This document shows positions 6,123 to 55,318 of a DNA stretch of 64,000 nucleotides, in pieces (position 1 is the stretch's first letter; each line of letters begins with the position of its first letter). The stretch covers positions 62,001-126,000 of the forward strand of contig NIVC01000202.1 in assembly GCA_002269645.1 (NCBI GenBank), given 5' to 3'. This stretch comes from Macrostomum lignano. Taxonomy: Eukaryota. Under the pieces are notes generated by a model. That model did no database searches. It saw only the letters and a program-made list of their open reading frames with translations, and was not told where the DNA came from. The position numbers were made by a program, and so were the translations under genes.

Positions 6123-6137
6123 GTTGCCAATGGCAAC
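6123..6137. promoter_or_regulatory. RFX X-box-like palindrome GTTGCCAATGGCAAC
   Basis: Matches GTNRCC-N3-RGYAAC and sits inside the palindrome TCGTTGCCA-A-TGGCAACGA. Confidence 0.3.
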
Positions 6138-7683: not shown

Positions 7684-8157
7684 TCTCTTTCAGTTACAAG
7701 AAAACTAAAACAGCTTTAATGTCAAAAAAAATTGTTCAAGAACCCCCAGTCTTAGGGAAGAGAGTCACTCAATTCCAAGTTCCACTTTTAGCTGTCCTGG
7801 GCCAAAAAATTTCCCCTCAAAAAGAGCCTCTCAATTGTAAATTTTATAAATCGATCTCAACTCGATTGCGGTGGCCCGTAGGGGGTAGGGGTTGGTGGCG
7901 CAAACTTTTTTATAGTAAAATTTTGCCCCATGCAGAAAAGCACGCCTCTTTTATGCTGCCTTACCAGTAGATTCCATTGAAGGAGGTTCAGCAGATCCAC
8001 CTCTCTCTCTTTCTCTCTATCTCTCTCTTTTCTCTGCCATGGCCGATCTGACAATTATTAGAATTTCACATTTCATGCTACAAAGACTGCTTCGCTCTCT
8101 GCGACTGCGGAAGGCATTTGGTGGCGCCATGGCAACTACTTCGAATTGTCTAACTCG

Positions 8158-9262
8158 TATATGAGAATAATCAAACTAGCATATGAGAATCATCAAACTA
8201 GCATATGAGAATCATCAAACTAGCATATGAGAATCATCAAACTCCTATATGAGAATCATCAAATGAGAATCATCAAACTAGCATATGAGAATCATCAAAC
8301 TAGCATATGAGAATCATCAAACTCGTATATGATAATCATCAAACTAGCATATGAGAATCATCAAACTCGTATATGAGAATCATCAAACTCGTATATGGGA
8401 ATCATCAAACTCCTATATGAGAATCATCAAACTAGCATATGAGAATCATCATACTCGCATATGAGAATCATCAATCTAGCATATTAGAATCATCAAACTA
8501 GCATATGAGAATCATCAAACTAGCATATGAGAATCATCAAACTCCTATATGAGAATCATCAAACTCCTATATGAGAATCATCAAACTCCTATATGAGAAT
8601 CATCAAACTCCTATATGAGAATCATCAAACTCCTATATGAGAATCATCAACTAGCATATGAGAATCATCAAACTAGCATATGAGAATCATCAAACTAGCA
8701 TATGAGAATCATCAAACTCCTATATGAGAATCATCAAACTCCTATATGGGAATCATCAAACTCCTATATGAGAATCATCAAACTCCTATATGAGAATCAT
8801 CAAACTCGTATATGGGAATCATCAAACTCCTATATGGGAATCATCAAACTCCTATATGAGAATCATCAAACTCCTATATGAGAATCATCAAACTCCTATA
8901 TGAGAATCATCAACTAGCATATGAGAATCATCAAACTAGCATATGAGAATCATCAAACTAGCATATGAGAATCATCAAACTCCTATATGAGAATCATCAA
9001 ACTCCTATATGAGAATCATCAAACTCCTATATGGGAATCATCAAACTCCTATATGAGAATCATCAAACTAGCATATGAGAATCATCAAACTAGCATATGA
9101 GAATCATCAAACTCGTATATGAGAATCATCAAACTAGCATATGAGAATCATTTAAATTTTATATGAGAATCATCGTCGACATGAGAATCATTAATATGAG
9201 AATAATTAATATGAGAAAAATCTTGGATGAGAAACCACAGATTTGAGAATCATCTATGAGAA
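8158..9262. repeat. Minisatellite, 22 bp unit ATATGAGAATCATCAAACT(AGC/CCT/CGT)
   Basis: Tandem units; they decay toward the putative castor donor at 9288. Confidence 0.97.
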
Positions 9263-10138: not shown

Positions 10139-11433
10139 ATTGATCCCATCATTGATCCTATCATTGATCCCATCATTGATCCTATCATTGATCCCATCAT
10201 TGATCCCATCATTGATCCTATCATTGATCCCATCATTGATCCTATCATTGATCTCATCATTGATCCTATCATTGATCCCATCATTGATCCTATCATTGAT
10301 CCTATCATTGATCCCATCATTGATCCTATCATTGATCCCATCATTGATCCTATCATTGATCCCATCATTGATCCCATCATTGATCCTATCATTGATCCCA
10401 TCATTTATCCTATCATTGATCTCATCATTGATCCTATCATTGATCCCATCATTGATCCTATCATTGATCCCATCATTGATCTCATCATTGATCCTATCAT
10501 TGATCCAATCATTGATCCCATCATTGATCCCATCATTGATCCTATCATTATCCCATCATTGATCCTATCATTGATCCCATCATTGATCCTATCATTGATC
10601 CCATCATTGATCCCATCATTGATCCTATCATTGATCCTATCATCGATCCTATCATTGATCCCATCATTGATCCTATCATTGATCCCATCATTGATCTCAT
10701 CATTGATCCTATCATTGATCCAATCATTGATCCCATCATTGATCCCATCATTGATCCTATCATTGATCCCATCATTGATCCCATCATTGATCCTATCATT
10801 GATCCTATCATCGATCCTATCATTGATCCCATCATTGATCCCATCATTGATCCTATCATTATCCCATCATTGATCCTATCATTGATCCCATCATTGATCC
10901 TATCATTGATCCTATCATTGATCCCATCATTGATCCCATTATTGATCCCATCATTGATCTCATCATTGATCCTATCATTGATCCAATCATTGATCCCATC
11001 ATTGATCCTATCATTATCCCATCATTGATCCTATCATTGATCCCATCATTGATCCTATCATTGATCCCATCATTGATCCCATCATTGATCCTATCATTGA
11101 TCCTATCATCGATCCTATCATTGATCCCATCATTGATCCTATCATTGATCCTATCATTGATCCCATCATTGATCCCATCATTGATCCCATCATTGATCCC
11201 ATCATTGATCTCATCATTGATCCTATCATTGATCCAATCATTGATCCTATCATTGATCCTATCATTGATCCCATCATTGATCCCATCATTGATCCCATCA
11301 TTGATCCCATCATTGATCCTATCATTGATCCTATCATTGATCCCATCATTGATCCTATCATTGATCCCATCATTGATCCTATCATTGATCCCATCATTGA
11401 TCCTATCATTGATCCCATCATTGATCCCATCAT
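10139..11433. repeat. 12-bp minisatellite ATTGATCCYATC
   Basis: About 100 tandem units; source of the IDPI/SLIP/MIGS ORFs. Confidence 0.98.
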
Positions 11434-12305: not shown

Positions 12306-12694
12306 AGGGGGCCGTGTAGCCCAGTGGTCAAGCGCGGCGCTCTGGTGTGCCAGCGGCCCAGGCTCGATTCCAAGTGCAGTCAATATTAATTTGGAGCTAA
12401 ACTGGAATCTCGGCTTGGCTCTGCTCGTGCAATTAACGCCATTGAGAGCCAACCCCCCAAGGCACAGTGAAGTGTACATGCCTAACGATAAATAAAGCTA
12501 GGGCCGCTGTACACTCCTGTGTGTGTGTGCCTGTGCGTATGACTGCGTACGTATCCGCGCGCTTGTGTGCCTGCTCAGGGGAGTCGGCGGAATGGGCAGC
12601 AATGCCTCTCGCCGGTTGTGTGACAATGTCGCTTAAAGTGCGCCGGGTATACACAGCCCCTTGACTCTAATAAAAAGTAATAAAAAAACAAAAG
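12306..12694 (+). mobile_element. tRNA-derived SINE family A, copy 1
   Basis: A-box TAGCCCAGTGG, B-box GGCTCGATTCC and an A-rich tail. Body is shared with 32644-32975 and 54948-55318. Confidence 0.88.
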
Positions 12695-19377: not shown

Positions 19378-19490
19378 GAATTCCCAGCAAACCCGCTTAC
19401 AGAGGAGATGATGCCCGAATGTATTTCGCTGCTTTGCAAGATCGGCAGCGGACTGGCGCACGCCTACGTAAAGCTGGACTGCAAGGGGCG
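19378..19490 (+). CDS. LRRC23: LRRC23 exon 2
   Basis: EFPANPLTEEMMPECISLLCKIGSGLAHAYVKLDCKGR matches LRRC23 PLTEDMMKEGLSLLCKTGNGLAHAYVKL; cag and gtgag boundaries. Confidence 0.95.
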
Positions 19491-19589
19491 GTGAGTTGCG
19501 CCAGAGCCAGAGCAGAATCAGGGAGCTGCGGGGCCGCTGAAGAATGATGGCGGTGGAAAGGGGGGTGGTGAGCAGCAGCACTCCCTGAA

Positions 19590-22390
19590 GAGTCGGAGGG
19601 AGGCAGATGAGCAGCGGCACTCCCTGAAGAGTCGGGGGGAGGCAGGTGAGCAACTGAGGAGAGTCGGGGGGAGGCAGGTGAGCAACTGAGGAGAGTCCGG
19701 GGGAGGCAGGTGAGCAGCTGAGGAGAGTCGGGGGAGGCAGGTGAGCAACTGAGGAGAGTCGGGGGAGGCAGGTGAGCAACTGAGGAGAGTCGGGGGGAGG
19801 CAGGTGAGCAACTGAGGAGAGTCCGGGGGAGGCAGGTGAGCAACTGAGGAGAGTCGGGGGGAGGCAGGTGTGCAACTGAGAGTCGGGGGGAGACAGGTGA
19901 GCAACTGACAGTCGGGGGAGGCAGGTGAGCAACTGAGGAGAGTCCGGGGGAGGCAGGTGAGCAACTGAGGAGAGTCGGGGGGAGGCAGGTGTGCAACTGA
20001 GGAGAGTCGGGGGGAGGCAGGTGAGCAACTGAGAGTCGGGAGAGGCAGGTGAGCAACTGAGGAGAGTCCGGGGGAGGCAGGTGAGCAACTGAGGAGAATC
20101 GGGGGGAGGCAGGTGAGCAACTGAGGAGAGTCCGGGGGAGGCAGGTGAGCAACTGAGGAGAGTCCGGGGGAGGCAGGTGAGCAACTGAGGAGAGTCGGGG
20201 GGAGGCAGGTGTGCAACTGAGAGTCGGGGGAGAGGTGTGCAACTGAGAGTCGGGGGAGCAGGTGAGCAACTGAGGAGAGTCCGGGGGAGGCAGGTGAGCA
20301 ACTGAGGAGAGTCCGGGGGAGGCAGGTGAGCAACTGAGGAGAGTCGGGGGGAGGCAGGTGAGCAACTGAGGAGAGTGCGGGGGAGGCAGGTGAGCAACTG
20401 AGGAGAGTCCGGGGGAGGCAGGTGAGCAACTGAGGAGAGTCGGGGGGAGGCAGGTGTGCAACTGAGAGTCGGGGGGAGACAGGTGAGCAACTGAGAGTCG
20501 GGGGAGGCAGGTGAGCAACTGAGGAGAGTCCGGGGGAGGCAGGTGAGCAACTGAGGAGAGTCGGGGGAGGCAGGTGAGCAACTGAGGAGAGTCCGGGGGA
20601 GGCAGGTGAGCAACTGAGGAGAGTCCGGGGGTGGCAGGTGAGCAACTGAGGAGAGTCGGGGGGAGGCAGGTGTGCAACTGAGAGTCGGGGGGAGACAGGT
20701 GAGCAACTGACAGTCGGGGGAGGCAGGTGAGCAACTGAGGAGAGTCCGGGGGAGGCAGGTGAGCAACTGAGGAGAGTCGGGGGAGGCAGGTGTGCAACTG
20801 AGGAGAGTCGGGGGGAGGCAGGTGTGCAACTGAGAGTCGGAGGGAGACAGGTGAGCAACTGAGAGTCGGGGGAGGCAGGTGAGCAACTGAGGAGAGTCCG
20901 GGGGAGGCAGGTAAGCAACTGAGGAGAGTCGGGGGAGGCAGGTGAGCAACTGAGGAGAGTCGGGGGAGGCAGGTGAGCAACTGAGGAGAGTCCGGGGGAG
21001 GCAGGTGAGCAACTGAGGAGAGTCCGGGGGAGGCAGGTGAGCAACTGAGGAGAGTCCGGGGGAGGCAGGTGAGCAACTGAGGAGAGTCCGGGGGAGGCAG
21101 GTGAGCAACTGAGGAGAGTCGGGGGGAGGCAGGTGAGCAACTGAGGAGAGTCCGGGGGAGGCAGGTGAGCAACTGAGGAGAGTCCGGGGGAGGCAGGTGA
21201 GCAACTGAGGAGAGTCCGGGGGAGGCAGGTGAGCAACTGAGGAGAGTCGGGGGGAGGCAGGTGTGCAACTGAGGAGAGTCGGGGGGAGGCAGGTGTGCAA
21301 CTGAGAGTCGGAGGGAGACAGGTGAGCAACTGAGAGTCGGGGGAGGCAGGTGAGCAACTGAGGAGAGTCGGGGGGAGGCAGGTGTGCAACTGAGGAGAGT
21401 CGGGGGGAGGCAGGTGTGCAACTGAGAGTCGGAGGGAGACAGGTGAGCAACTGAGAGTCGGGGGAGGCAGGTGAGCAACTGAGGAGAGTCCGGGGGAGGC
21501 AGGTGAGCAACTGAGGAGAGTCCGGGGGAGGCAGGTGAGCAACTGAGGAGAGTCGGGGGAGGCAGGTGAGCAACTGAGGAGAGTCCGGGGGAGGCAGGTG
21601 AGCAACTGAGGAGAGTCCGGGGGAGGCAGGTGAGCAACTGAGGAGAGTCCGGGGGAGGCAGGTGAGCAACTGAGGAGAGTCGGGGGAGGCAGGTGTGCAA
21701 CTGAGAGTCGGGGGGAGACAGGTGAGCAACTGAGAGTCGGGGGAGGCAGGTGAGCAACTGAGGAGAGTCCGGGGGAGGCAGGTGAGCAACTGAGGAGAGT
21801 CCGGGGGAGGCAGGTGAGCAACTGAGGAGAGTCGGGGGGAGGCAGGTGTGCAACTGAGAGTCGGGGGAGACAGGTGAGCAACTGAGGAGAGTCCGGGGGT
21901 GGCAGGTGAGCAACTGAGGAGAGTCAGGGGGAGGCAGGTGAGCAACTGAGGAGAGTCGGAGGGAGGCAGGTGAGCAACTGAGGAGAGTCGGGGGGAGGCA
22001 GGTGTGCAACCGAGGAGAGTCGGGGGAGGCAGGTGAGCAACTGAGGAGAGTCGGGGGGAGGCAGGTGAGCAACTGAGGAGAGTCGGGGGGAGGCAGGTGA
22101 GCAACTGAGGAGAGTCGGGGGAGGCAGGTGAGCAACTGAGGAGAGTCGGGGGAGGCAGGTGTGCAACTGAGAGTCGGGGGGAGACAGGTGAGCAACTGAG
22201 AGTCGGGGGAGGCAGGTGAGCAACTGAGGAGAGTCGGGGGGAGGCAGGTGAGCAACTGAGGAGAGTCCGGGGGAGGCAGGTGAGCAACTGAGGAGAGTCG
22301 GGGGAGGCAGGTGAGCAACTGAGGAGAGTCCGGGGGAGGCAGGTGAGCAACTGAGGAGAGTCGGGGGGAGGCAGGTGAGCAGCGGCACTC
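19590..22390. repeat. ~29-33 bp minisatellite GGGGGAGGCAGGTGAGCAACTGAGGAGAGTC(C) in LRRC23 intron 2
   Basis: Tandem units; source of the 787-1034 aa antisense ORFs. Confidence 0.98.
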
Positions 22391-22486
22391 AGAGGTCAAG
22401 GTGGCTAAGAAGCTGAAAGCAGAGGCGGCCCAAGTCAGCGCTAGAAAGTCATTAAAAATCGCAACATCCCGCCGCAAAAAATCCAG

Positions 22487-22740
22487 TGAGCTGACGAACA
22501 TCGAGCTGCTTCAGCGGTACGTTCATCTGAGATACGTTGACCTGTCCAACAACCACATCAAGGACATCTCACCATTGAGCAACCTGACTGAGCTGCTCAC
22601 GCTGAAGTGCGAGAACAATGCCCTAGCATCCGGGGAGCTAGCCCAGCTGCCGTACCTTCAGTACCTGAACCTCAACAACAACAAGATCTCCTCATTCCAG
22701 GGCATCAACCATCCACTGCTGGAGCACCTGTCACTCAACT
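22487..22740 (+). CDS. LRRC23: LRRC23 exon 3 (LRRs)
   Basis: ELTNIELLQRYVHLRYVDLSNNHIKDISPLSNL...HPLLEHLSLN; phase-consistent ag/gt. Confidence 0.96.
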
Positions 22741-23019: not shown

Positions 23020-25800
23020 GTAGAAGCTCCATGACACACGGGGAAGCTACATGACATACTGGGAAGCTACATGACACACGGGAAGCTACATGATACACGG
23101 GGAAGCTACATGACACACGGGAAGCTACATGACACATTGGGAAGCTCCATGACACACGGGAAGCTACATGACACATGGGGAAGCTACATGACACACTGGG
23201 AAGCTACATGACACACTGGGAAGCTCCATGACACACTGGGAAGCTACATGACACATGGGGAAGCTCCATGACACACTGGGAAGCTACATGACACACGGGG
23301 AAGCTACATGACACACGGGGAAGCTACATGACACATTGGGAAGCTACATGACACACTGGGAAGCTACATGACACACGGGGAAGCTACATGACACATTGGG
23401 AAGCTACATGACACACGGGGAAGTTACATGACATATTGGGAAGCTCCATGACACACTGGGAAGCTACATGACACACTGGGAAGCTACATGACACATGGGG
23501 AAGCTACATGACACACTGGGAAGCTACATGACACACTGGGAAGCTACATGACACATGGGGAAGCTACATGACACACTGGGAAGCTACATGACACACGGGA
23601 AGCTACATGACACATGGGGAAGCTACATGACATATTGGGAAGCTCCATGACACACTGGGAAGCTACATGACACACTGGGAAGCTACATGACACATGGGAA
23701 GCTACATGACACATGGGAAGCTACATGACACACGGGAAGCTACATGACACACTGGGAAGCTACATGACACATGGGAAGCTACATGACACACGGGAAGCTA
23801 CATGACACACGGGAAGCTCCATGACACATGGGAAGCTACATGACACACGGGAAGCTACATGACACACGGGGAAGCTCCATGACACATTGGGAAGCTACAT
23901 GACACACTGGGAAGCTACATGACACATTGGGAAGCTACATGACACACTGGGAAGCTACATGACACACGGGGAAGCTACATGACACATTGGGAAGCTACAT
24001 GACACACTGGGAAGCTACATGACACACGGGAAGCTACATGACACATGGGGAAGCTACATGACACACTGGGAAGCTACATGACACACGGGAAGCTACATGA
24101 CACATTGGGAAGCTACATGACACACGGGGAAGCTACATGACACACGGGGAAGCTACATGACACACGGGGAAGCTACATGACACACGGGGAAGCTCCATGA
24201 CACATTGGGAAGCTACATGACACACTGGGAAGCTACATGACACACGGGGAAGCTACATGACACACTGGGAAGCTACATGACACACGGGAAGCTACATGAC
24301 ACATGGGAAGCTACATGACACACTGGGAAGCTACATGACACACTGGGAAGCTACATGACACATGGGAAGCTACATGACACACTGGGAAGCTACATGACAC
24401 ACGGGAAGCTACATGACACATGGGAAGCTACATGACACATTGGAAGTACATGACATATTGGGAAGCTCCATGACACACTGGGAAGCTACATGTGGGAAGC
24501 TACATGACACACTGGGAAGCTACATGACACACGGGAAGCTACATGACACACTGGGAAGCTACATGACACACTGGGAAGCTACATGACACACTGGGAAGCT
24601 ACATGACACACTGGGAAGCTACATGACACACTGGGAAGCTACATGACACACTGGGAAGCTACATGACACACTGGGAAGCTACATGACACATGGGAAGCTA
24701 CATGACACACGGGAAGCTACATGACACACGGGAAGCTACATGACACACTGGGAAGCTACATGACACACGGGAAGCTACATGACACACGGGAAGCTACATG
24801 ACACACGGGAAGCTACATGACACACGGGAAGCTACATGACACACTGGGAAGCTACATGACACACGGGAAGCTACATGACACATTGGGAAGCTACATGACA
24901 CACTGGGAAGCTACATGACACACTGGGAAGCTACATGACACACTGGGAAGCTACATGACACACTGGGAAGCTACATGACACACGGGGAAGCTACATGACA
25001 CACTGGGAAGCTACATGACACACGGGAAGCTACATGACACATTGGGAAGCTACATGACACATGGGAAGCTACATGACACACTGGGAAGCTACATGACACA
25101 CTGGGAAGCTACATGACACACTGGGAAGCTACATGACACACGGGAAGCTACATGACACACTGGGAAGCTACATGACACACTGGGAAGCTACATGACACAC
25201 GGGAAGCTACATGACACACTGGGAAGCTACATGACACACTGGGAAGCTACATGACACACGGGGAAGCTACATGACACACGGGAAGCTACATGACACACGG
25301 GAAGCTACATGACACACGGGAAGCTACATGACACACGGGAAGCTACATGACACACGGGAAGCTACATGACACACGGGGAAGCTACATGACACACGGGAAG
25401 CTACATGACACACGGGAAGCTACATGACACACGGGAAGCTACATGACACACTGGGGAAGCTACATGACACACGGGAAGCTACATGACACACGGGAAGCTA
25501 CATGACACATGGGAAGCTACATGACACACTGGGAAGCTACATGACACACGGGAAGATACATGACACACTGGGAAGCTACATGACACACGGGGAAGCTACA
25601 TGACACACTGGGAAGCTACATGACACACGGGGAAGCTACATGACACACTGGGAAGCTACATGACACACGGGAAGCTACATGACACACGGGAAGCTACATG
25701 ACACACTGGGAAGCTACATGACACATGGGGAAGCTACATGACACACGGGGAAGCTACATGACACACTGGGAAGCTACATGACACATGGAGAGCTCCATGA
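23020..25800. repeat. 19-20 bp minisatellite GGGAAGCTACATGACACAC(T/G) in LRRC23 intron 3
   Basis: Tandem units. Confidence 0.98.
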
Positions 25801-26987: not shown

Positions 26988-27174
26988 GTATGAATAGGAA
27001 TGCTCATAAAAACTCTCATGCATATTAAGGCGTAAAGCAAAGGCTCTCTAAACCGAATCGAAAACCCATTAATCAAGTAGAGGCCCTATGACTGAAGTGA
27101 GAATTCAGAAAGCCCCATGGGAATTGGGAATTTATGATCAAAGCTCCATGATTGAATAGGAAGCTCTGCATGGG

Positions 27175-29350
27175 ACCAAAAGGAAAGCTCCATCAACAAA
27201 AGGAAAGCTCCATGACCAAAAGGAAAGCTCCATAACCAAAAGGAAAGCTCCATAACCAAAAGGAAAGCTCCATCACCAAAAGGAAAGCTCCATCACCAAA
27301 AGGAAAGCTCCATCACCAAAAGGAAAGCTCCATAACCAAAAGGAAAGCTCCATAACCAAAAGGAAAGCTCCATGACCAAAAGGAAAGCTCCATAACCAAA
27401 AGGGAAGCTCCATGACCAAAAGGAAAGCTCCATGACCAAAAGGAAAGCTCCATAACCAAAAGGAAAGCTCCATGACCAAAAGGAAAGCTCCATGACCAAA
27501 AGGAAAGCTCCATAACCAAAAGGGAAGCTCCATGACCAAAAGGAAAGCTCCATGACCAAAAGGAAAGCTCTATAACCAAAAGGAAAGCTCCATAACCAAA
27601 AGGAAAGCTCCATGACCAAAAGGAAAGCTCCATGACCAAAAGGAAAGCTCCATGACCAAAAGGAAAGCTCCATGACCAAAAGGAAAGCTCCATGACCAAA
27701 AGGAAAGCTCCATAACCAAAAGGAAAGCTCCATAACCAAAAGGAAAGCTCCATGACCAAAAGGAAAGCTCCATAACCAAAAGGAAAGCTCCATGACCAAA
27801 AGGAAAGCTCCATGACCAAAAGGAAAGCTCATGACCAAAAGGAAAGCTCCATGACCAAAAGGAAAGCTCCATGACCAAAAGGAAAGCTCCATGACCAAAA
27901 GGAAAGCTCCATGACCAAAAGGAAAGCTCCATGACCAAAAGGAAAGCTCCATAACCAAAAGGAAAGCTCCATAACCAAAAGGAAAGCTCCATAACCAAAA
28001 GGAAAGCTCCATGACCAAAAGGAAAGCTCCATGACCAAAAGGAAAGCTCCATAACCAAAAGGAAAGCTCCATGACCAAAAGGAAAGCTCCATAACCAAAA
28101 GGAAAGCTCCATGACCAAAAGGAAAGCTCCATAACCAAAAGGAAAGCTCCATAACCAAAAGGAAAGCTCCATAACCAAAAGGAAAGCTCCATAACCAAAA
28201 GGAAAGCTCCATAACCAAAAGGAAAGCTCCATAACCAAAAGGAAAGCTCCATGACCAAAAGGAAAGCTCCATGACCAAAAGGAAAGCTCCATGACCAAAA
28301 GGAAAGCTCCATAACCAAAAGGAAAGCTCCATAACCAAAAGGAAAGCTCCATGACCAAAAGGAAGCTCCATGACCAAAAGGAAAGCTCCATGACCAAAAG
28401 GAAAGCTCCATGACCAAAAGGAAAGCTCCATAACCAAAAGGAAAGCTCCATAACCAAAAGGAAAGCTCCATGAACCAAAAGGAAAGCTCCATGACCAAAA
28501 GGAAAGCTCCATGACCAAAAGGAAAGCTCCATAACCAAAAGGAAAGCTCCATGACCAAAAGGAAAGCTCCATAACCAAAAGGAAAGCTCCATGACCAAAA
28601 GGAAAGCTCCATGACCAAAAGGAAAGCTCCATAACCAAAAGGAAAGCTCCATAACCAAAAGGAAAGCTCCATGACCAAAAGGAAGCTCCATGACGAAAAG
28701 GAAAGCTCCATAACCAAAAGGAAAGCTCCATAACCAAAAGGAAAGCTCCATGACCAAAAGGAAAGCTCCATGACCAAAAGGAAAGCTCCATGACCAAAAG
28801 GAAAGCTCCATGACCAAAAGGAAAGCTCCATGACCAAAAGGAAAGCTCCATAACCAAAAGGAAAGCTCCATAACCAAAAGGAAAGCTCCATAACCAAAAG
28901 GAAAGCTCCATGACCAAAAGGAAAGCTCCATAACCAAAAGGAAAGCTCCATAACCAAAAGGAAAGCTCCATGACCAAAAGGAAAGCTCCATGACCAAAAG
29001 GAAAGCTCCATAACCAAAAGGAAAGCTCCATGACCAAAAGGAAAGCTCCATGACCAAAAGGAAAGCTCCATAACCAAAAGGAAAGCTCCATGACCAAAAG
29101 GAAAGCTCCATGACCAAAAGGAAAGCTCCATAACCAAAAGGAAAGCTCCATGACCAAAAGGAAAGCTCCATGACCAAAAGGAAAGCTCCATGACCAAAAG
29201 GAAAGCTCCATAACCAAAAGGAAAGCTCCATAACCAAAAGGAAAGCTCCATGACCAAAAGGAAAGCTCCATGACCAAAAGGAAAGCTCCATGACCAAAAG
29301 GAAAGCTCCATGACCAAAAGGAAAGCTCCATGGCCAAAAGGAAAGCTACA
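27175..29350. repeat. 20-bp minisatellite CCAAAAGGAAAGCTCCAT(G/A)A in LRRC23 intron 5
   Basis: Tandem units. Confidence 0.98.
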
Positions 29351-29462
29351 GGATCAAAAGGAAACCTCCATGATCGATAGGAAATTACCGGGATAAAATA
29401 GAAAACTCTATAAGAGTAGCAACCCAATAAACAGCCAGCTAAATATCCCATAATTCCTCCAG

Positions 29463-31280: not shown

Positions 31281-32109
31281 TGGCTTTCGATGGCAAGAAT
31301 TTTTGCTTCTTTTACCCCGCCATTTTTGCTACAGATGCTCTTCAACTGTAGCAATTAAATAAAAGCAATTCACGCAAGACAATAAGTTGCAATATGATTC
31401 ACGTGATTTAATTGTCTCGGACAAATTAAAAACTGTTTTGGAAGCAGAGACGGGCCAAGCAATATAATCAGAAATAATCAAGTTTCGGTACTGGAGCAGC
31501 AGTGCTTACCATGCAACATGTATATGTATATGACATTACAGACACTAAAGGTCAACTCCGATTAGGTTGGTGTTACAGTAAAAAGCGCAAGCTAAAAAAA
31601 CACACAAACAATTTTCATATTAAACACAACTATTGAAGGCTGACAATAGTCACAAGAAGCTGATTATGTATAATGTGTTGCAATAATGAATAGAACTAAG
31701 CATATAGCAATTATGATATAATCTACAGACAGTAGACAGTAGAATACCAAGCTATATAAAGGTAAAATTAAATTAGTAAAATTACTGATCAACAAGAAGA
31801 CAGAGAAACTTGAATATAGAGACTAATAAAATTTTATCAATTAGCTTCACGCATGCACAAATTCAACTGGGATGGCCTTAGCATGGGTTTAACAATACTT
31901 GCTGTATAGATAATTATTGATCAAACAAATAGCAAAACGCAGGCAACCGATAGGCGAAGAAAAATTCGTTACTAAAAAATTATTTTAATATATACTAATG
32001 ACAGTAATAAGCATACTGTTCAAACGAGTTTGATTGACACATTCGCGCACAAAAACACTAGTCAATGTATGTGTTTAGCAGGTCTCGGACAGCCGATAAA
32101 GCGCAGTGC

Positions 32110-32597
32110 TCAAGCCAGAGTTGACATGATATTCTTCAAGTTGCTATTCTTAGTTTTCTGCACTAGCAAGCACAGCTTGGTCATCGGCACCCGCTGCTCA
32201 GTGAGGTGCGGCAGCGAGATCGGTATCCTGTTGTAGTCGATCTTGTTCTCGAATATGCCGATGCTGTTGGGGATCAGTTCTGGCGACAGGTGCACCAGGA
32301 AGCCGTTGATGTACAGGCAGTTGCTAGCCTGATCCTCGGGCAGCTGGATCACCCGGTAGCTGTACGTGGCCTTCCAGTTGATCTCCTTGATGGTCTTCTG
32401 CGCGGCCGGGTTCAAGCCGACAGCGATTACATTGGTGCCGGCCATGCAGACCAGATCCTTCAGCGAGGTTGTGCCCTTCTTGGTGTCCAGCTGGGGCACG
32501 GACACGATTGTCACCGGGTACTCGGGGAACGTTTTAGCAACGCAGGTGGCGCCGGCCTCGTTCGTGTGAGTTGAGATGCCAACGATGATCTCCTTGC
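32110..32597 (-). CDS. DDAH: DDAH-like protein exon 3 (terminal)
   Basis: KEIIVGISTHTNEAGATCVAKTFPEYPV...CMAGTNVIAVG...NCLYING aligns with DDAH1; tag acceptor, phase 1. Confidence 0.93.
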
Positions 32598-32643
32598 CTA
32601 TGGGAAGGTGATTTTGAAGTAAAGCTTACAATAAGTAGCACTC

Positions 32644-32975
32644 AGGGGGCCGAAACCCAGGTGTGTGTCCAACGGCCCAGGCTCGATTCCAAGTGCAGTC
32701 ACATTAACTTGTGGCTAAATTGGAATCTTCGCTTGGCTCTGCTCGTCCAACCCCCAAGGCGCAGTGAAGTGTACATGCCTGACGATAAATAAAGTCAGGG
32801 CCGCTGTACACTCCTGTGTGAGTGTGTGCCTGTGCGTATGACTGCGTACGTATCCGCGCGCTTGTGTGCCTGCTCAGGGGAGTCGGTGGAATGGGCAGCA
32901 ATGCCTCTCGCCAGTTGTGCGAGAACGTCGCTTAAAGTGCGCCAGGGTGCACACAGCCCCCTTCCAGTTATTATT
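32644..32975 (+). mobile_element. SINE family A, copy 2 (A-box damaged), in DDAH intron 2
   Basis: B-box GGCTCGATTCC and body nearly identical to copy 1. Confidence 0.85.
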
Positions 32976-33280
32976 AGGCTACTAATGCGAGAGTCGGCCC
33001 GCAGATGGCGAGAAGACAAGAAGTCATGCCGCCTGAGCATGACCCCTGGGCATGCACACAATCGTCGGGCATGTACATTGTGCACTTTAACTTGGGGATA
33101 GAGCCCCAAATGGGTGTGACTTTTTGAAATCAGTAAACTAGCAAAGCTCAAACTTTTGAACTTGCACAATAGATCTGTAGGGCATTAGCACTAAAATAAA
33201 TTACTACTTACTAGTGTAAGATTTGAAACCTTGGGTTCAAGCCTGAATTTACAAATTATACTAACAGCTCATTAACTTAC

Positions 33281-33383
33281 CAGTGAATAGTACATCGCTA
33301 CCTTCAAGCTGGGCTCCATCAATGGAGATCTCGGCCACTTTCATGCCTAGCTGACGCTTCAAAGTCTGTCGTATGGCACTTAT
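33281..33383 (-). CDS. DDAH: DDAH-like protein exon 2
   Basis: ISAIRQTLKRQLGMKVAEISIDGAQLEGSDVLFTG (DDAH LDGGDVLFTG); cag and gtaag boundaries. Confidence 0.93.
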
Positions 33384-33486
33384 CTGCATAGGAATTATAA
33401 TTATATTATAAAAAACTATTCATTTAGTTTTAATCTATGACTAAAGCCAAGGTTTTTATACTTTAGAATATATTGAATTATGGCAA

Positions 33487-34877
33487 CTAGTTGTTTCACC
33501 CATAAACTGTTTTGGCCATGGACACTTCACCCCCAGACCATTTTGCCCATAGACCATTTTGGCTTAAGCCAATTAGACTAGTTTGGCAAAGGTAGCAACA
33601 AATGTGAATGCCCAAACTTGGAGAAAGAATTGATTGAATAATTGATTCTTAATTGGTGACAAATCTTATACTTTTAGAATTTTTGGTTTTACCTTGCTTG
33701 TAACTGAAACCCTTTCTCTTGATCTACTAATTGAAATGGCTTATCGCTTATCATGCTTTTGAAAGGAATAACTTTCTTAAAAAAACTTGTAATGATTCAC
33801 AATCTTATTAAACACAATTGTCAGTGTTGGGCACCAGTCTGTTAATAAGCGTTAATCCATTAATAAGCATTAAGATTTTTTTAAACTAACAGATTAACAA
33901 ATTTGTATTAATAATTTTGTGAGTAAACAACAAATTCATTGTTAACATTAATGGCAATATCAATGACCAAAGATGAAAAGAAAAAACAAAAATATGTCTG
34001 ACAAGAAGTTACAATATTACGAATGTTTTTCAATTTATCTAAATGCTTTATTCATCTCTGTTTATAACAATGATCATGCAAACGTAACAACTTACTAATT
34101 GAACTTTAATAAAGAATTAAAATTGTGAAATTTATTGCTCTTGCGTGAGCATCAATCACTTTGATTCACTTTTTTAACAATCTTTTGTGACTTTCTGCTG
34201 TGCCTGCTAATGCTACTAAAGCAATCTTATTCATATTTTATTATTAACTAATTAGCTTTCAATTTTCAAATAAATAAGCTACTTTTTTACTATATGCTTA
34301 CTTTTAGTAGTATTATGCATACAAGTTTTATAAATTTTTATTTATTACTTTTTAGCTTATAAATCACTTAGATGATCTCTGTGTTTTGCTAAAAAGATGA
34401 AAAAGCAAACACAGTACATTATGAAGTCTGTTTTGGAAAAAAAGTGCCAGATTTATCTATTAAGTGAGTTAAATTTAATAGATTAATGCTTATTAATGAT
34501 TATCAATTAATTTCTAGTTAACTTTAACAAAATTAAGAGTTAATAAGTTAAGATTATTTGTTTTAATACTAATGATTTTGCCATTAATGGAAGTTAAGAT
34601 TTTCATTAAGGGTGCCCAACACTGACAATTGTAATAATTCATGTTGTGTAGCAACAATTCATATTGTATTATACAATAAAACTGAAAATTAGCATTAAAT
34701 AGTATTGAAAAGACAAATCTAAAGATACATATAGAGCTAAATCTCTAAATTACACAATTACCATTCTGGCCAAAATGCTTATAGCCAAACTGGTTTATAG
34801 GCAAAACAGACTATGGGCAAAATGGTCTAAAGGCAAAATGTCCAAGGCCAAAATTTTTAGGGGCAAAACAACTGGAA
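33487..34877. mobile_element. Older element with diverged ~110-bp inverted arms (33487-33595 / 34760-34877), enclosing the hAT insertion
   Basis: Arms share AGACCATTTTGCCCATAG / CTATGGGCAAAATGGTCT and neighbouring TTTTGGCC units in inverted orientation. Confidence 0.6.
33822..34624. mobile_element. Non-autonomous hAT-type DNA transposon (803 bp)
   Basis: Perfect 14-bp TIR CAGTGTTGGGCACC and perfect 8-bp TSD ACAATTGT (33814-33821, 34625-34632). No transposase ORF. Confidence 0.9.
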
Positions 34878-35269
34878 TTCTAAATTATAATTGAACTCAA
34901 TTTTATTGTCATTAAGCAATCAACAATTGCTTGATTGAAGCTTTATTACTGACAAATTGCCTTTTCTTAAAGATAAAACAACATAGACAAAATATCTTAG
35001 GATAATAAATATAAATAAAAATATGTATGGTCAAGTTATCATTAATTATTATTTGTAATATTAAGAAGTATTACTATAGTAAATTTTTAGTGACTAGTTT
35101 TACTGTCAGACTTGGAATTATAGATGGAATGTTTGCTGAGCTTAGATTCATGCAGTCTAAACTTACTTTTCCTCAAAAAACTATATTTGGGCCAATTATA
35201 GTTTATATTGGCAATATTATACATCAATTTAAAAAAAACTTTCTAGTCAAGTCAAATAGATATGCTTAC

Positions 35270-35524
35270 CTCTCCTTGCCTATTGCCATATGGATTGCAC
35301 ATTAAAGCAATGTTGTTGATAATTACTGCAGTGTCATCAACAAATGGACTAGTTGGATGCCGCTCTTCAACGTCAATTTCTAAAACATCCATAAAACTTT
35401 GTCTTAAAATTTCAACAAGATTTTCATGCTCCGCCCTTGCTGTTTCAATGTCAATTTTTGGGTACTTTTGAGAAAAAGACTGTGGAATCTTTTGAACGAT
35501 GGCATAGTTGTATTTAAATGCCAT
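35270..35524 (-). CDS. DDAH: DDAH-like protein exon 1; full model 281 aa
   Basis: MAFKYNYAIVQKIPQSF...ARAEHENLVEILRQ...PFVDDTAVIINNIALMCNP...RQGE; GTAAG donor. Confidence 0.9.
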
Positions 35525-36791
35525 TTTAGCGAGCACTGATAAAAAAAGTTACTAATTGGGTTTACTTGGAACAGCGATTGATAAAGCACGATTTAAGTCT
35601 CGCCCATATATAGCGCATAAACTACAAGGAATATAAATACAATTTGAAATTGATTGACTAATCTTGATTTATAGGAAATGAACCCTTATATTTTCTTTGT
35701 GTGTCTTTCAGGCTAATTTAAAATGCGATATTTTATAAAGTTACTACTTTTGTCCGGCGTTTTACAGGTTGTAGGATGACTTTGTTATAGCATATGAGAT
35801 GCCCGGCGTATCTATACAATAACGTTCACAGCAAAAATAGTCTGGAGAAAGAGAGAGCTGTTGCATCTTTTTTCTCGCTTTTATGTCTGCTACCTGGTTC
35901 TTTTTTATTATGAGCTTCTGTGTGTGTCTAAAAGTGGAGATTTAACCTTTTCCATATATGCCGTGAGCTAAACATTTAACTGAGTTTTTACCTATGAGTT
36001 GTCTTGCATCCACATGTTGGCAAAATGCTTAAATATTATTAGGGTTGTCTTTTTTAAAGTTGACAAATGCTGGAGCGGTGCAGTTCTATAATTCATGTCG
36101 AAACATGCGACCTTCTACTTCAAGTAAATAAGTATGATATATATAGACATACATATATATAGACGTGTACATGTATTTTGTATGTACATGTACAGTATGA
36201 GTGCAATCTAACGAGTAAAGTTAGGATGGCTGATGCAGAATAATGCACAATGGAAACAATCTTCAAGCGGCTCTGTGACTGTTGTTATGATATGACAATT
36301 TACAACTTTACCCCACAAGGTACGGTGAATGAGAAATTATACAAATAATAATCATTATAATTGTTTTCATCCTAAATACATTCATCGGAAAGTACATACT
36401 TCATGATCACAAAAAAATTTAACAAACAGCAAACGGAGATTTCGCTTATTTATCAATCGTACGTACAAGTACGTCTGGAATCTGTGGGTTTAAAAGTGCT
36501 GCTAAATTTAGATCATGCAACAACTTGCGGAAAACATTTGAATGGAAGGACGATATGAGAAGCCACTCCATACAGCAATCGTCTGTTCATAGCTTGACGT
36601 ATCTAAAAGATCCATGCTAGAATACTTTTCCGTGGAGCAAAAGAGCAATGCACAACTGCAAACGAGCGTGAAGCATCTGAAATCCGCATTCACTTTCAAG
36701 GATTAAATATCATTTAGCGGCAGAGTAGATAAAGATAAATTCGATCATTTGGCAGCGACGAGCGTACATGTGATTCATAACGATAGTTTTT

Positions 36792-37009
36792 CTATAGCAC
36801 GCTGCAGCATCTTCTCTGGCTGCCGCAGCCGCTGTCGCTGTCGCTACCATGTCGACGCCGACGTCGAAGGTCCACAGCGCTTGAGCCGTTGCGCATCTGC
36901 ATGGAGCTGTTCGCCAAGCTGACTCCAGTAGCGCCGCTGCGACCAACTAAGGAGTAGTACTTCAGCAGTTTGCGGGCCACCTCTCTCAGCATGTCGGACA
37001 CACCGTCGC
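36792..37009 (-). CDS. Rab-like GTPase exon 4 (terminal, ends RRCCSVL prenylation motif)
   Basis: GDGVSDMLREVARKLL (G5-helix 5 region); phase-1 acceptor; CaaX-like end. Confidence 0.85.
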
Positions 37010-37435
37010 CTTTTGTTAAGGAAATGTAAGAAAAATACTGAAGGAGGATGCATACATTTTTAGTTACCGTTGTATCAGCACGTTTGTATCGCTTGTTTAC
37101 GTAATATTTAGCGATGCTTCATGCCTCCATAAATGAATCCTATTCAACTGTTTTAAAGAAACCTGCACTTGCTTTGTGCCACACAAGCTTCAACCTGCCG
37201 TTCGCACATGTAGATGCAGGGTCAAACTGCGTCATCATTAAGAGAACATAATTTCAAACAACCTGCAGGCGAAAAACTTAAGTGCAACTGATCCACAGTT
37301 TTGAGCATTTAAAAGTAATAGCTGCCGACGCTACTATTACTATTACTATAGCTGCCGATGGCGCAACGTCCTGAAAAAAACGGTAACTCATTCTAGTGGT
37401 CCTTGATTTAATGATTGCTGCATGCACCTACTGAC

Positions 37436-37555
37436 CTGTTTTTGCAGATACAGACGAGATGAGCTTGCAGTTGAATGTTGCTGCAAAGTTTTGCAGTTGC
37501 TCCTGCGTTATAGCCGGATTGAGGTCGTTCTTATTGGCCACGATCACCTTCAGGC
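37436..37555 (-). CDS. Rab-like GTPase exon 3
   Basis: LKVIVANKNDL (G4 NKxD) and SVSAKTG (G5). Confidence 0.9.
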
Positions 37556-38167: not shown

Positions 38168-39539
38168 CTGTTGATTGATTGACATGGTTGTACTTTAGTA
38201 TTAAGCAGGTGTATGAATCATGTGGCATCCACCAAGAATGACCGTGTTTTAAAAGGCTATCATATGTCAATCCATAAACTATCGTATGTCTTGAGTATCA
38301 CAGAGAGGCAACCAAAAGTCTGAGTAAAGAAATTGGACTCCTATAGCTGAAAAATAAGGGTTAGCCTTTTAGATTGCCAACGAGTCTTTTAAACCATGCA
38401 GCCAGGCAACCCGATGAAGCACTGTGGAACAATGGTTCAAAGCATTCTATAGAGAGAGTAAGGCGATGCTGGCTCCCGACCAGAACGGAATACTTTATCG
38501 ATCTGTTGAAACAGTTGGGAATCAGTACTCAAAGAAAGAAATATGAAGTCATGGTCATGCGGGATTCGTTTGACACAAAAAGCACAGGCTCCCCCTCCCA
38601 GCCTCCACTGAGCCCCATAGCCCAATATGCCGGAAGTGAGAGCAGATGGAGAGGTTCAGGCGACTTGGGGCAACTAAAATACATGGATTAAAAGTGCTCT
38701 TTTCTTTCTATATGGCACGGAGATAGGATGAGTGGCCAGGCTACTATGGCAAGGAAGAATACGCATGCTGAGTCTGCTTCCGACACGACGCGTCCTGGCA
38801 GCCCGAGAGCAGCGCTATATGCTATTCTATAGAACTAAAGGCATCAACCAAAACCAGCTGGTCTGTTTTTAATAAACAATTTAGAAGGCCCAGCGTCTAC
38901 AATTTCCTACGAGATTTAAAAGCGCCATGCAGGGTAAAAATGGCTGATGAAGAATTGGTGAATTGTATATTAAGGGGAGACAGCATCAGTTTTCGTTGAT
39001 TGGTCCACTGAACCTGAACGGGAAGTTTTAGAAGTTTTTTTTCAGTAGCATTGGTAGTGAGAAAAGGTTGGTTAAAATATGGCATCACAATGAGAAGCCG
39101 TACGTTTGACTATAGTGGCTTGTGGGTGTAGGAAATTTCCCGGAACTGAACTGACTGCTTAGTTCACACTGGCTCTCGCCCGTCTCTACCTCTGCCCGCC
39201 CTGTCTTCCTCCACGTTAAAAAGGTTTCCAGGCGTGCCTACCAGCCTGGTTACAAGCTCTCGATACGCTCACAGATGCGAGGCTGCTGAGCAAACTAGCA
39301 GACAAGAAGACTTATAGCATGATTGTTTCCTTCAAAGCTATTGACAAAATTTGATTCTATTCTCGGTGGCAACAAGAAAGAAGCGAATGAAATGCAAGTC
39401 TCTTCTGCAAGACACCATTCAAGGTGAGTCCTGTACACCCGCACCACTGCACACCGGCTGATATAAAAGCACTATTTTTTAATATTCTGTTCTGCTAAAA
39501 CTGCTGAATGACAACTATGCATGAAAATTAAAAACTGAC

Positions 39540-39722
39540 CTTAACACGAGCTTCATCAACTTCGACTGACGTGCTGCAGCTGTCGATGCCTACGGTGACA
39601 TCGGCGCTGAAGATGTCCTCCTTGATGCGCATAAACAGCGAAGTCTTGCCAACGCCACTCTCGCCAATGAGAACCAGCTTAAACATTGGCGTCCGCAGCA
39701 TTGAGTACCTGTGATCTTGCAT
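39540..39722 (-). CDS. Rab-like GTPase exon 1 (start at 39722 or 39701); full model ~227 aa
   Basis: FKLVLIGESGVGKTSL P-loop and TVGID switch I; GTCAGT donor. Confidence 0.88.
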
Positions 39723-54947: not shown

Positions 54948-55318
54948 TTTTTTTTTTTTAGAGGCAGGGGGGTTGTGTGCACCCTGGCGCATTTTAAGCG
55001 ACATAGGCACACAACCGGCGAGAGGCATTACTGCCCATTCCGCCGACTCCCCTGAGCAGGCACACAAGCGCGCGGATACGTACGCAGGCACACACTCACA
55101 CAGGAGTGTACAGCGGCCCTAACTTTTTTTTTATATTATCATTAGGCATGTACACTTCACTGCGCCTTGGGGGGTTGGCTGTCAAGGCCGTTAATTGCAC
55201 GAGCAGAGCCAAGCCGAGATTCCAATTCAGCCCCAAATTAATGTGGCTGCACTTGGAATCGAGCCTGGGTCGCTGGCACACCAGAGCAGCTGCGCTACCG
55301 CTGGGCTACAGCCCCCCC
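54948..55318 (-). mobile_element. SINE family A, copy 3, with 13-bp TSD GTACATTCGTGTA
   Basis: Poly(A) tail at the left, A and B boxes at the right; TSD at 54935-54947 and 55319-55331. Confidence 0.92.

What the first reader, a model, noticed from the sequence alone, without database searches (positions are those of the whole stretch)
32110..35524. DDAH homolog that has lost its catalytic residues: probable pseudoenzyme
The 3-exon, 281-aa model is intact and aligns end to end with DDAH1, yet the active site is replaced (human DDAH1 sequence and numbering recalled). His173 (GLHLKS) is Ser (TTSLKD, codon 32464-32466). The nucleophile Cys274 (LLTCCS) is Lys (PMTKLC, codon 32176-32178). Substrate-binding Asp73, Arg145 and Asp269 read Thr, His and Arg. 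An intact ORF without the catalytic pair suggests a non-catalytic role such as a methylarginine or other ligand sensor, a scaffold, or a dominant-negative partner of an active paralog. A Cys two residues further on could indicate shifted chemistry.
Basis: partly seen in the sequence, partly recalled or inferred. Interest (0 to 1): 0.75.

Follow-up and report, generated by a model that had tools for sequence, protein, structure and literature searches.

The report
Flatworm DDAH homolog without catalytic residues
This intact, strongly conserved Macrostomum lignano gene encodes a DDAH-fold protein whose catalytic cysteine and histidine are replaced by lysine and serine in every flatworm examined, including schistosomes and liver flukes, so the "dimethylargininase" label these genes carry is probably wrong.

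Summary
The minus-strand 3-exon model (35524-35270, 33383-33281, 32597-32110) gives 281 aa, identical to M. lignano PAA61541.1/PAA88059.1.

Three alignment methods (phmmer, MAFFT, hhalign) agree on the active site:
- His173 is Ser164 and Cys274 is Lys260.
- Asp73, Arg145 and Asp269 are Thr, His and Arg. Asp127 is Glu.
- Asp79 and Arg98 are kept.

The fold is intact: AF2 pLDDT 91.7, TM 0.87-0.89 to human DDAH1.

All 21 flatworm homologs examined share it (Lys274 20/21, Glu127 21/21, no His173).

The gene is under strong purifying selection. dN/dS is 0.02-0.08 at dS above 1. All 6 exon differences from a near-identical second locus are synonymous.

A spliced transcript of a 95%-identical homolog exists. 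The S. mansoni ortholog has been detected in a vesicle proteome.

The Cys two residues on is Macrostomum-specific (Ala in other flatworms). It sits where vertebrate DDAH2 has its Cys, and DDAH2 is published as not hydrolysing ADMA.

Best reading: a phylum-wide non-catalytic DDAH derivative with a remodelled but conserved pocket and a conserved disordered C-terminal tail.

I could not settle whether flatworms also keep an active paralog. No biochemistry was possible.

The parts
35270..35524 (-). Exon 1 (ATG at 35524; codons 1-85). Includes Thr58 (35353-35351, the Asp73 position), Asp64 (35335-35333, retained Asp79) and Arg82 (35281-35279, retained Arg98).
   Evidence: GT donor after 35270
33384..35269 (-). 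Intron 1 (1886 nt, 27% GC) with two nested inverted-repeat pairs resembling MITE inserts.
33281..33383 (-). Exon 2 (103 nt). Includes Glu112 (33305-33303, the Asp127 position) and the invariant SDVLFTG motif.
32598..33280 (-). Intron 2 (683 nt). Its GC-rich block at 32663-32960 is a dispersed ~300-bp repeat with other copies in the window.
32110..32597 (-). Exon 3 (codons 120-281 plus TGA at 32112-32110); GC3 0.83.
32464..32466 (-). Ser164 codon (TCG), at the position of the general acid/base His173 of human DDAH1.
32176..32178 (-). Lys260 codon (AAG), at the position of the nucleophile Cys274. Lys in 20 of 21 flatworm homologs.
32170..32172 (-). Cys262 codon (TGC), two residues after the nucleophile position. 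Same column as the Cys of vertebrate DDAH2. Ala in all non-Macrostomum flatworms.
   Evidence: PMC10256801
32566..32568 (-). His130 codon, at the position of the carboxylate-binding Arg145. His in 18 of 21 flatworm homologs.
32191..32193 (-). Arg255 codon, at the position of the guanidino-binding Asp269. Gly in other flatworms.
32113..32145 (-). C-terminal tail SNLKNIMSTLA. Carries the motif I-x-S-T-[LIM]-[P/A], conserved across flatworms, nemerteans and an annelid, yet predicted disordered (pLDDT about 40).

Best explanation
The locus is one of at least three Macrostomum lignano copies of the flatworm DDAH-family gene. It encodes a fully folded five-bladed pentein (DDAH-fold) protein that cannot carry out the known DDAH reaction, because the thiol nucleophile is Lys260 and the general acid/base is Ser164.

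The change is ancient: all flatworms examined share it. It is also maintained by selection.

The pocket did not drift after losing catalysis. It was rebuilt into a new, conserved set of residues: Asp64, Arg82 and Glu112 are invariant, Lys260 is present in 20/21 sequences and His130 in 18/21.

My inferred mechanism is that the protein works without turnover, as a binding protein or adaptor. The basic Lys at the pocket floor either pairs with Asp64/Glu112 and closes the former guanidino site, or turns it into a site for a different small ligand, for example one with a distal acidic group. The conserved, disordered C-terminal I-x-S-T-L-P/A tail serves as a docking motif for a partner protein.

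Shown: gene model, homology, fold, residue replacements, phylum-wide conservation, purifying selection, and expression of orthologs. Inferred: absence of ADMA hydrolysis, from mechanism and mutant precedent. Speculative: the nature of the ligand or partner.
For: - Gene model and identity to the public protein.
- Homology: Pfam PF19420 at 34.5 bits against a cutoff of 23; human DDAH1 at E 1.5e-38.
- Fold: AF2 pLDDT 91.7, pTM 0.88; Foldseek TM 0.87-0.89 and rmsd 1.8-2.0 A to DDAH1 structures.
- Residue replacements by three methods.
- Phylum-wide state and pocket conservation above background (mean column entropy 1.0 bit; pocket columns 0-0.7).
- Purifying selection: dN/dS is 0.082, 0.024 and 0.068 at dS 1.1-1.5. 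Only the exons are conserved between paralogous loci. The 6 exon differences from locus L003 are all synonymous, against 26 substitutions plus 31 indel columns in the introns.
- Expression: L002 is an intronless 969-nt transcript contig of a 95%-identical homolog, colinear across both splice junctions. The S. mansoni ortholog sits on 74 short Logan contigs and was found by mass spectrometry in exosome-like vesicles (PMC5818524).
- Precedent that Cys-to-Ser variants are used as inactive forms: PDB 3p8p (C274S) and 1h70 (C249S); statement in PMC10256801.
- Conserved disordered tail.
Against: - No biochemical test was possible, so inactivity is inferred from sequence.
I could not measure whether Lys260, Ser164, Glu112 and Asp64 actually touch.
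- Asp79 and Arg98 equivalents are invariant and the pocket is conserved. That is also what a changed catalytic site would look like.
- Ser plus Lys is a known catalytic dyad in other hydrolase families.
- No direct transcript evidence exists for this exact copy. The transcript L002 differs at dS 1.19, so it comes from a paralog or another Macrostomum species.
Confidence: 0.62

Rival explanations
1. It is still an enzyme, but with new chemistry in the old pocket. One option is a Ser164/Lys260 dyad, with Glu112 orienting, acting on an amide or amidine substrate other than ADMA. Another is Cys262 acting as a displaced nucleophile.
For: - Pocket residues are more conserved than the protein average, and the two replacements are themselves conserved: Lys 20/21; Ser or Cys 18/21.
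- Asp79 and Arg98 equivalents are invariant.
- Ser-Lys dyads are catalytic in other hydrolase families (general knowledge).
Against: - Position 173 is Asn in 3 of 21 flatworm sequences, and one of these also has Asn at 274. The dyad is therefore not obligatory.
- Cys262 is Ala in 18 of 21.
- The same +2 Cys in DDAH2 was judged too far away for catalysis (PMC10256801).
- The substrate lid is shortened, and Asp73, Arg145 and Asp269 are replaced.
Confidence: 0.13
2. It is a non-catalytic regulator of an active, canonical DDAH paralog in the same animal. It would act by competing for substrate, partners or localisation.
For: Gastropods carry both a canonical and a non-canonical DDAH gene: Haliotis rubra P0372 and P0051; Batillaria P0374 and P0207. 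Coexistence therefore occurs in related phyla.
Against: - No canonical DDAH from any flatworm appeared among named hits covering about 15 flatworm genera, nor in the two canonical-profile searches.
- The flatworm genes branch where the species tree predicts for the lineage's own DDAH ortholog.
- Mammalian DDAH1 is monomeric (general knowledge), so there is no oligomer to poison.
- Caveat: one search also missed the gastropod canonical paralogs, and searches listed only the top 120 hits. Absence is not established.
Confidence: 0.1
3. It is an ordinary active DDAH, and the apparent loss comes from alignment or gene-model error.
For: Loop lengths before the nucleophile differ by one residue among protostome homologs: insects and the tardigrade have Cys one position later. 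Small register shifts do occur in this family.
Against: - Three alignment methods agree, and both flanks of the nucleophile segment align without gaps.
- Neodermatan orthologs have no Cys anywhere in the C-terminal strand, and no His near the LK motif.
- The gene model equals the public annotation, and a spliced transcript of a homolog is colinear with it.
Confidence: 0.03
4. It is a decaying or neutrally evolving gene copy.
For: - M. lignano is highly duplicated.
- The locus sits among minisatellites and transposon fragments.
Against: - dN/dS is 0.02-0.08.
- There are no stops or frameshifts, and the splice sites are intact.
- Only the exons are conserved between paralogous loci.
- Identity to schistosome and tapeworm orthologs is 50-57%.
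Confidence: 0.01

Closest known systems
DDAH1 (N(G),N(G)-dimethylarginine dimethylaminohydrolase 1, EC 3.5.3.18; e.g. PDB 6szq, 3i2e, 2jai)
   Same: - Same fold and length, colinear alignment, 32% identity, TM 0.87-0.89.
- Retains the Asp79 and Arg98 equivalents, the DVLFTG and TN..GA motifs, and an acidic residue at 127.
   Different: - Nucleophile Cys274 is Lys and His173 is Ser.
- Asp73, Arg145 and Asp269 are replaced.
- The lid loop is 6 residues shorter.
- It has an extra conserved C-terminal tail.
It cannot perform the thiol-amidine chemistry of DDAH1.
Vertebrate DDAH2
   Same: - A DDAH-family protein whose nucleophile position is not Cys and which has a Cys two residues later.
- Arg145 and Asp269 are also replaced (fish DDAH2).
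- It is published as unable to hydrolyse ADMA (PMC10256801). It is the precedent for a conserved non-DDAH 'DDAH'.
   Different: - Not orthologous in any special sense. DDAH2 groups with vertebrate DDAH1 (bootstrap 90-92), while the flatworm genes sit in a protostome clade. The losses are therefore independent.
- DDAH2 has Ser at 274, not Lys.
- Human DDAH2 keeps His173 (from memory). Fish DDAH2 has Arg there.
Non-canonical DDAH homologs of other protostomes (nemerteans Lineus and Tubulanus, annelid Owenia, bryozoan Watersipora, gastropod second copies, ticks)
   Same: - Nearest relatives by HMMER and by tree.
- They also lack Cys274.
- Nemerteans and Owenia share the C-terminal I-x-S-T-L tail, and Lineus has a basic residue (Arg) at 274.
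   Different: - Most keep His173 and Asp127.
- Only flatworms combine Lys274 with loss of His173.
- None of these proteins has been characterised, as far as my literature searches show.
Trypanosoma brucei RESC5 (PDB 8dpk)
   Same: - A DDAH-fold protein described as a DDAH pseudoenzyme and used as a structural subunit of an RNA-editing complex (PMC12936278).
- Foldseek TM 0.73 to the model.
- It shows that the fold can be reused as a scaffold.
   Different: Only 16% identity, an unrelated lineage and context, and no evidence of shared function.

Membership tests
DDAH family (Pfam PF19420 DDAH_eukar; pentein / guanidino-group modifying enzyme superfamily) | Sequence homology above the curated threshold | tested here: met
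   PF19420 at 34.5 bits against a cutoff of 23, and PF02274 at 27 against 22.8. Human DDAH1 at E 1.5e-38. Flatworm profile against DDAH1 at E 8e-57.
DDAH family (Pfam PF19420 DDAH_eukar; pentein / guanidino-group modifying enzyme superfamily) | Five-module beta/alpha propeller (pentein) fold | tested here: met
   AF2 pLDDT 91.7. Foldseek top 20 are all DDAH1 structures, TM 0.80-0.90 (0.85-0.90 for 19 of them), rmsd 1.8-2.2 A.
Active dimethylargininase (EC 3.5.3.18) | Nucleophilic Cys (Cys274 of human DDAH1) | tested here: not met
   Lys260 by phmmer, MAFFT and hhalign.
Active dimethylargininase (EC 3.5.3.18) | General acid/base His (His173) | tested here: not met
   Ser164. There is no His within the TTSLKD segment.
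Active dimethylargininase (EC 3.5.3.18) | Acidic third triad residue (Asp127) | tested here: met
   Glu112, invariant in 21 flatworm sequences. This is a conservative change.
Active dimethylargininase (EC 3.5.3.18) | Substrate-binding set Asp73, Asp79, Arg98, Arg145, Asp269 and the Leu30 lid | tested here: not met
   Only Asp79 and Arg98 are retained. The others read Thr, His and Arg, and the lid is shortened by 6 residues.
Active dimethylargininase (EC 3.5.3.18) | Hydrolysis of ADMA or L-NMMA to citrulline | not testable with these tools
   Needs a recombinant protein assay.
Vertebrate DDAH2 clade | Branches with DDAH2 in a gene tree | tested here: not met
   NJ trees: DDAH2 pairs with vertebrate DDAH1 (bootstrap 90-92). 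Flatworms fall inside a protostome clade (bootstrap 100).
Vertebrate DDAH2 clade | Ser at 274 with Cys at 276 | tested here: inconclusive
   Cys at 276 is present in the three Macrostomum sequences only. Position 274 is Lys, not Ser.
Ser-Lys dyad hydrolases (worked-like comparison only) | Invariant Ser nucleophile and Lys base across the family | tested here: not met
   Position 173 is Ser in 15, Asn in 3 and Cys in 3 of 21. Position 274 is Lys in 20 and Asn in 1.

The most novel reading that the evidence does not exclude
Flatworms, possibly with nemerteans and some other spiralians, converted their DDAH ortholog into a protein with a new function that depends on the rebuilt pocket (Lys274, Glu127, Asp79, Arg98, His145). 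It would be either a sensor or carrier for a small metabolite other than methylarginines, or a hydrolase with Ser/Lys chemistry. It would be coupled to partners through the conserved C-terminal I-x-S-T-L-P tail. If flatworms also lack any canonical DDAH, they would clear free ADMA by another route or not at all. That would bear on nitric-oxide biology in schistosomes and flukes.
Probability: 0.2. Interest if true: 0.7.

Novelty: new variant of a known kind. Interest (0 to 1): 0.5.

Why it matters
Databases name these flatworm proteins 'Dimethylargininase' or 'DDAH1'. At least one parasitology paper interprets the schistosome protein, found in secreted vesicles, as a regulator of host or parasite nitric oxide (PMC5818524).

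The sequences show that the known DDAH mechanism is impossible in the whole phylum, so that reading and the EC annotation are probably wrong.

The case is a clean natural parallel to the DDAH2 controversy. It is an independent, ancient loss of the DDAH nucleophile, followed by hundreds of millions of years of purifying selection on the fold and on a rebuilt pocket. M. lignano is a tractable free-living model with RNAi and transgenesis, in which the non-enzymatic role of a DDAH-fold protein could be worked out.

Pseudoenzymes are common, and no function is demonstrated here. The finding is solid but of moderate surprise.

Tried and rejected
- Search for an active flatworm paralog. One search (profile of canonical DDAHs) listed only vertebrate DDAH1. 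One search (profile of gastropod canonical DDAHs) listed gastropods, decapods, cnidarians, a hemichordate and vertebrates, but no flatworm. Both show only the best 120 of about 2,600-3,200 hits, so they cannot prove absence. One search also missed the gastropod canonical copies, so its word index is not sensitive enough.
- Model coordinates were not exposed. I could not measure contacts of Lys260 or Ser164.
- tblastn of the protein against the window found no second DDAH-like gene there.
- Rfam found nothing in 30-41 kb.
- Literature searches for a described flatworm or invertebrate DDAH pseudoenzyme found nothing relevant. One search was badly posed. PMC10387209 does not mention the protein in its main text.
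- An idea I dropped: that protostome non-canonical DDAHs form one old paralog lineage separate from all canonical ones. Once decapod and hemichordate canonical sequences were added, they fell inside the same clade. The deep branching is unresolved by my NJ trees, and the losses may be multiple.
- The weak haemoglobin hits (E about 0.003, no significant domain) I treat as noise.
Full report
**1. What is at the coordinates**

Reading the minus strand of 31900-35800 and locating the boundaries gives three exons with GT-AG introns:
- Exon 1: 35524-35270 (255 nt).
- Exon 2: 33383-33281 (103 nt).
- Exon 3: 32597-32110 (488 nt including TGA).

The product is 281 aa. It is 281/281 identical to Macrostomum lignano PAA61541.1/PAA88059.1, listed as 'hypothetical protein' and as UniProt A0A267EJ58 'uncharacterized'. 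The gene DNA is identical to GCA_002269645.1 contig NIVC01000202.1.

A second UniProt model, A0A1I8I5P7 (named 'Dimethylargininase'), is a chimera. It joins the upstream Rab-like GTPase to exons 2-3.

**2. The residue claims**

phmmer against PDB aligns residues 6-268 with human DDAH1 (E 1.5e-38). In that alignment, in a MAFFT alignment of 79 sequences and in an hhalign profile-profile alignment, the positions read as follows:

| Human DDAH1 | This protein | Note |
|---|---|---|
| His173 | Ser164 | codon 32466-32464 |
| Cys274 | Lys260 | codon 32178-32176 |
| Asp73 | Thr58 | |
| Arg145 | His130 | |
| Asp269 | Arg255 | |
| Asp127 | Glu112 | conservative |
| Asp79 | Asp64 | retained |
| Arg98 | Arg82 | retained |

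Cys262 lies two residues after the nucleophile position. The lid loop around Leu30 is six residues shorter. Codon coordinates were verified. The segment from Leu265 to Lys281 has the same length in both proteins, so the Lys/Cys assignment does not depend on a gap.

**3. The fold is intact**

An AlphaFold2 model built on a 67-sequence alignment has mean pLDDT 91.7 and pTM 0.88. Only the last 11 residues are disordered. Foldseek against PDB returns human and bovine DDAH1 first (TM 0.87-0.89, rmsd 1.8-2.0 A), then Pseudomonas DDAH, then T. brucei RESC5 (TM 0.73), a DDAH-fold protein described as a pseudoenzyme (PMC12936278).

**4. The loss is phylum-wide, not a property of this locus**

Every flatworm homolog returned lacks both His173 and Cys274. 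The set covers:
- Macrostomum.
- Flukes: Fasciola, Paragonimus, Calicophoron, Opisthorchis, Clonorchis, Dicrocoelium, Schistosoma.
- Tapeworms: Spirometra, Hymenolepis, Rodentolepis, Dibothriocephalus, Mesocestoides.
- Several unnamed transcript contigs.

In 21 flatworm sequences:
- Asp79 (19/19 with a residue there), Arg98 and Glu127 (21/21) are invariant.
- Lys274 is present in 20/21 and His145 in 18/21.
- Position 173 is Ser 15, Asn 3, Cys 3.
- Position 276 is Ala 18, and Cys only in the three Macrostomum sequences.

These pocket columns are better conserved than the protein average (0-0.7 bit for Asp79, Arg98, Glu127, His145, Lys274 and position 276; Ser173 is at 1.15; mean 1.0). The pocket was rebuilt and then held, rather than left to drift. 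The non-Macrostomum flatworm sequences have no Cys in the C-terminal strand and no His next to the LK motif, so no register shift can rescue a catalytic pair there.

**5. The gene is under strong constraint and its relatives are expressed**

M. lignano has at least three loci:
- The window.
- A near-identical second locus, L003. It has 6 exon differences, all synonymous, against 26 substitutions and 31 indel columns in the introns.
- An older paralog, L001 (P0002, 84% aa). It has the same three-exon structure and the same upstream GTPase neighbour. Between the window and L001 only the exons align.

L002 is a 969-nt intronless contig from SRR28338163 encoding a 95%-identical protein. It is a spliced mRNA, colinear across both junctions.

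Nei-Gojobori estimates:

| Pair | dN/dS | dS |
|---|---|---|
| window vs L001 | 0.082 | 1.14 |
| window vs L002 | 0.024 | 1.19 |
| L001 vs L002 | 0.068 | 1.47 |

dS is near saturation, so the ratios are rough, but the direction is unambiguous.

The S. mansoni ortholog (A0A5K4F1Q9) occurs on 74 short Logan contigs. A protein annotated as S. mansoni DDAH (XP_002576557.1), presumably this ortholog, was identified with 3 peptides in exosome-like vesicles, where the authors discussed it as a regulator of nitric oxide (PMC5818524).

I have no direct transcript evidence for this exact copy.

**6. Place in the family**

An exhaustive HMMER search of 1.84 billion cluster representatives with the flatworm profile gave 116 hits below 1e-30. 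Of 94 representatives complete at the key columns:
- 59 have His173 and Cys274.
- 19 have only His173.
- 16 have neither.

The closest named relatives all lack Cys274: nemerteans (Tubulanus, Lineus), the annelid Owenia, the bryozoan Watersipora, Priapulus and a tardigrade. Sea urchin, amphioxus, cnidarians, decapods and a second gene in gastropods are canonical.

Neighbour-joining trees with 100 bootstraps show:
- Flatworms are monophyletic (100).
- They are sister to nemerteans (68-93).
- They sit inside a mostly protostome clade (100; one hemichordate canonical sequence also fell inside it).
- Vertebrate DDAH1 and DDAH2 are sisters (90-92).

The resemblance to DDAH2 is therefore convergent. 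Because canonical decapod sequences fall inside the protostome clade, the ancestor was probably an active DDAH, and the nucleophile was lost or shifted several times. Deep branches are poorly supported, and I make no claim about them.

**7. Comparison with DDAH2**

A multicentre study showed that human DDAH2 does not hydrolyse ADMA. It reports Ser274 or Leu275 at the place of the DDAH1 nucleophile, and a Cys276 that is not positioned for attack (PMC10256801). In my alignment the fish DDAH2 Cys and the Macrostomum Cys262 share a column.

It is absent from the other flatworms and has been argued to be non-catalytic where it has been studied.

**8. Mechanism**

Shown: the protein folds as DDAH, lacks the nucleophile and the general base, is conserved, and is expressed in relatives.

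Inferred from the established DDAH mechanism (thiolate attack on the amidino carbon with His as acid/base; Cys-to-Ser variants are the inactive forms crystallised as 3p8p and 1h70): it does not hydrolyse methylarginines.

My best guess for the positive function is a binding or adaptor role with two elements:
- A rebuilt pocket whose floor is now a Lys next to two conserved acids.
- A conserved but disordered C-terminal motif, I-x-S-T-[LIM]-[P/A], shared with nemerteans and Owenia. This has the signature of a short linear docking motif.

Rivals:
- A new catalytic chemistry (Ser/Lys). This is weakened by Asn at position 173 in three sequences.
- Regulation of an active paralog. No such paralog was found, but its absence is unproven.
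- Alignment error, contradicted by the evidence above.
- Neutral decay, contradicted by the evidence above.

**9. Novelty and score**

Loss of catalytic residues in a conserved enzyme homolog is a known kind of thing. Within this fold, DDAH2 and RESC5 are precedents. I found no paper describing the flatworm case or the wider set of protostome DDAH homologs without Cys274. Databases still call them dimethylargininases.

I rate it a new variant of a known kind, interest 0.5. It is robust, phylum-wide, relevant to annotation and to parasite biology, and testable in a good model organism. It has no demonstrated function and is only moderately surprising.

Noticed in passing
window 32110-35524 (exons 35270-35524, 33281-33383, 32110-32597); L001 6001-8668; L002 66-911: There is a steep third-position GC gradient within one gene: exon 1 GC3 0.31, exon 2 0.47, exon 3 0.83. 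The same gradient is kept in the old paralog (0.31/0.59/0.85) and in the homologous transcript (0.38/0.53/0.74), although synonymous sites are nearly saturated between them. The neighbouring GTPase gene is 0.57-0.67 throughout. Unexplained; local biased gene conversion or a mutational regime are possibilities.
   Followed up: partly
window 33510-33564 / 34799-34853 and 33793-33835 / 34611-34653: Two nested inverted-repeat pairs (55 nt at 80% and 43 nt at 79% complementarity) lie inside intron 1. They look like nested non-autonomous transposon (MITE-like) insertions.
   Followed up: no
window 32663-32960; copies at 12345-12660 and 54968-55281: The GC-rich block of intron 2 is a ~300-bp dispersed repeat with two more copies in the window (86% and 80% identity, one inverted).
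   Followed up: partly
window 1999-4593, 8152-9174, 10139-11433, 19628-22381, 23023-25800, 27174-29384, 63030-64000 and others: The window is packed with long minisatellite arrays: units of 12-44 bp, up to 142 copies, 28 TRF rows at score 200 or more. The long ORFs listed there (e.g. 19397-22501, 27293-29317) and the called 360-aa 'gene' downstream of the DDAH homolog lie inside such arrays and are probably artefacts.
   Followed up: partly
window 36798-37040, 37434-37553, 39537-39722 (minus strand): A Rab/Ras-like small GTPase gene lies upstream of the DDAH homolog. The same neighbour precedes the paralog in L001 and the duplicate in L003. UniProt A0A1I8I5P7 (P0003) wrongly fuses this GTPase to DDAH exons 2-3 and drops the residues VAKTFPE.
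   Followed up: partly
window 32113-32145 (residues 271-281); relatives P0019, P0200, P0201: The extreme C-terminal motif K-x-I-x-S-T-[LIM]-[P/A/D/Q] is conserved from flatworms to nemerteans and the annelid Owenia, but is predicted disordered. Molluscan non-canonical copies carry a related I-[IL]-S-N-[IV] followed by an extension.
   Followed up: partly
relatives: Haliotis rubra P0372 and P0051; Batillaria attramentaria P0374 and P0207: Gastropods carry two DDAH-family genes, one with the full catalytic set and one without Cys274. Many protostome 'DDAH1' annotations (ticks, snails, annelid, bryozoan, nemerteans) have no Cys at or next to the nucleophile position. Insects, the tardigrade and Priapulus have it shifted by one residue.
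   Followed up: partly
L003 (GCA_002269645.1 NIVC01002020.1) 5001-8438 versus window 32110-35524: The assembly holds a second, nearly identical copy of the whole locus. The protein is the same, with 0.7% exon and 1.0% intron divergence plus indels. This is consistent with the known duplicated state of the M. lignano genome or with uncollapsed haplotypes.
   Followed up: partly
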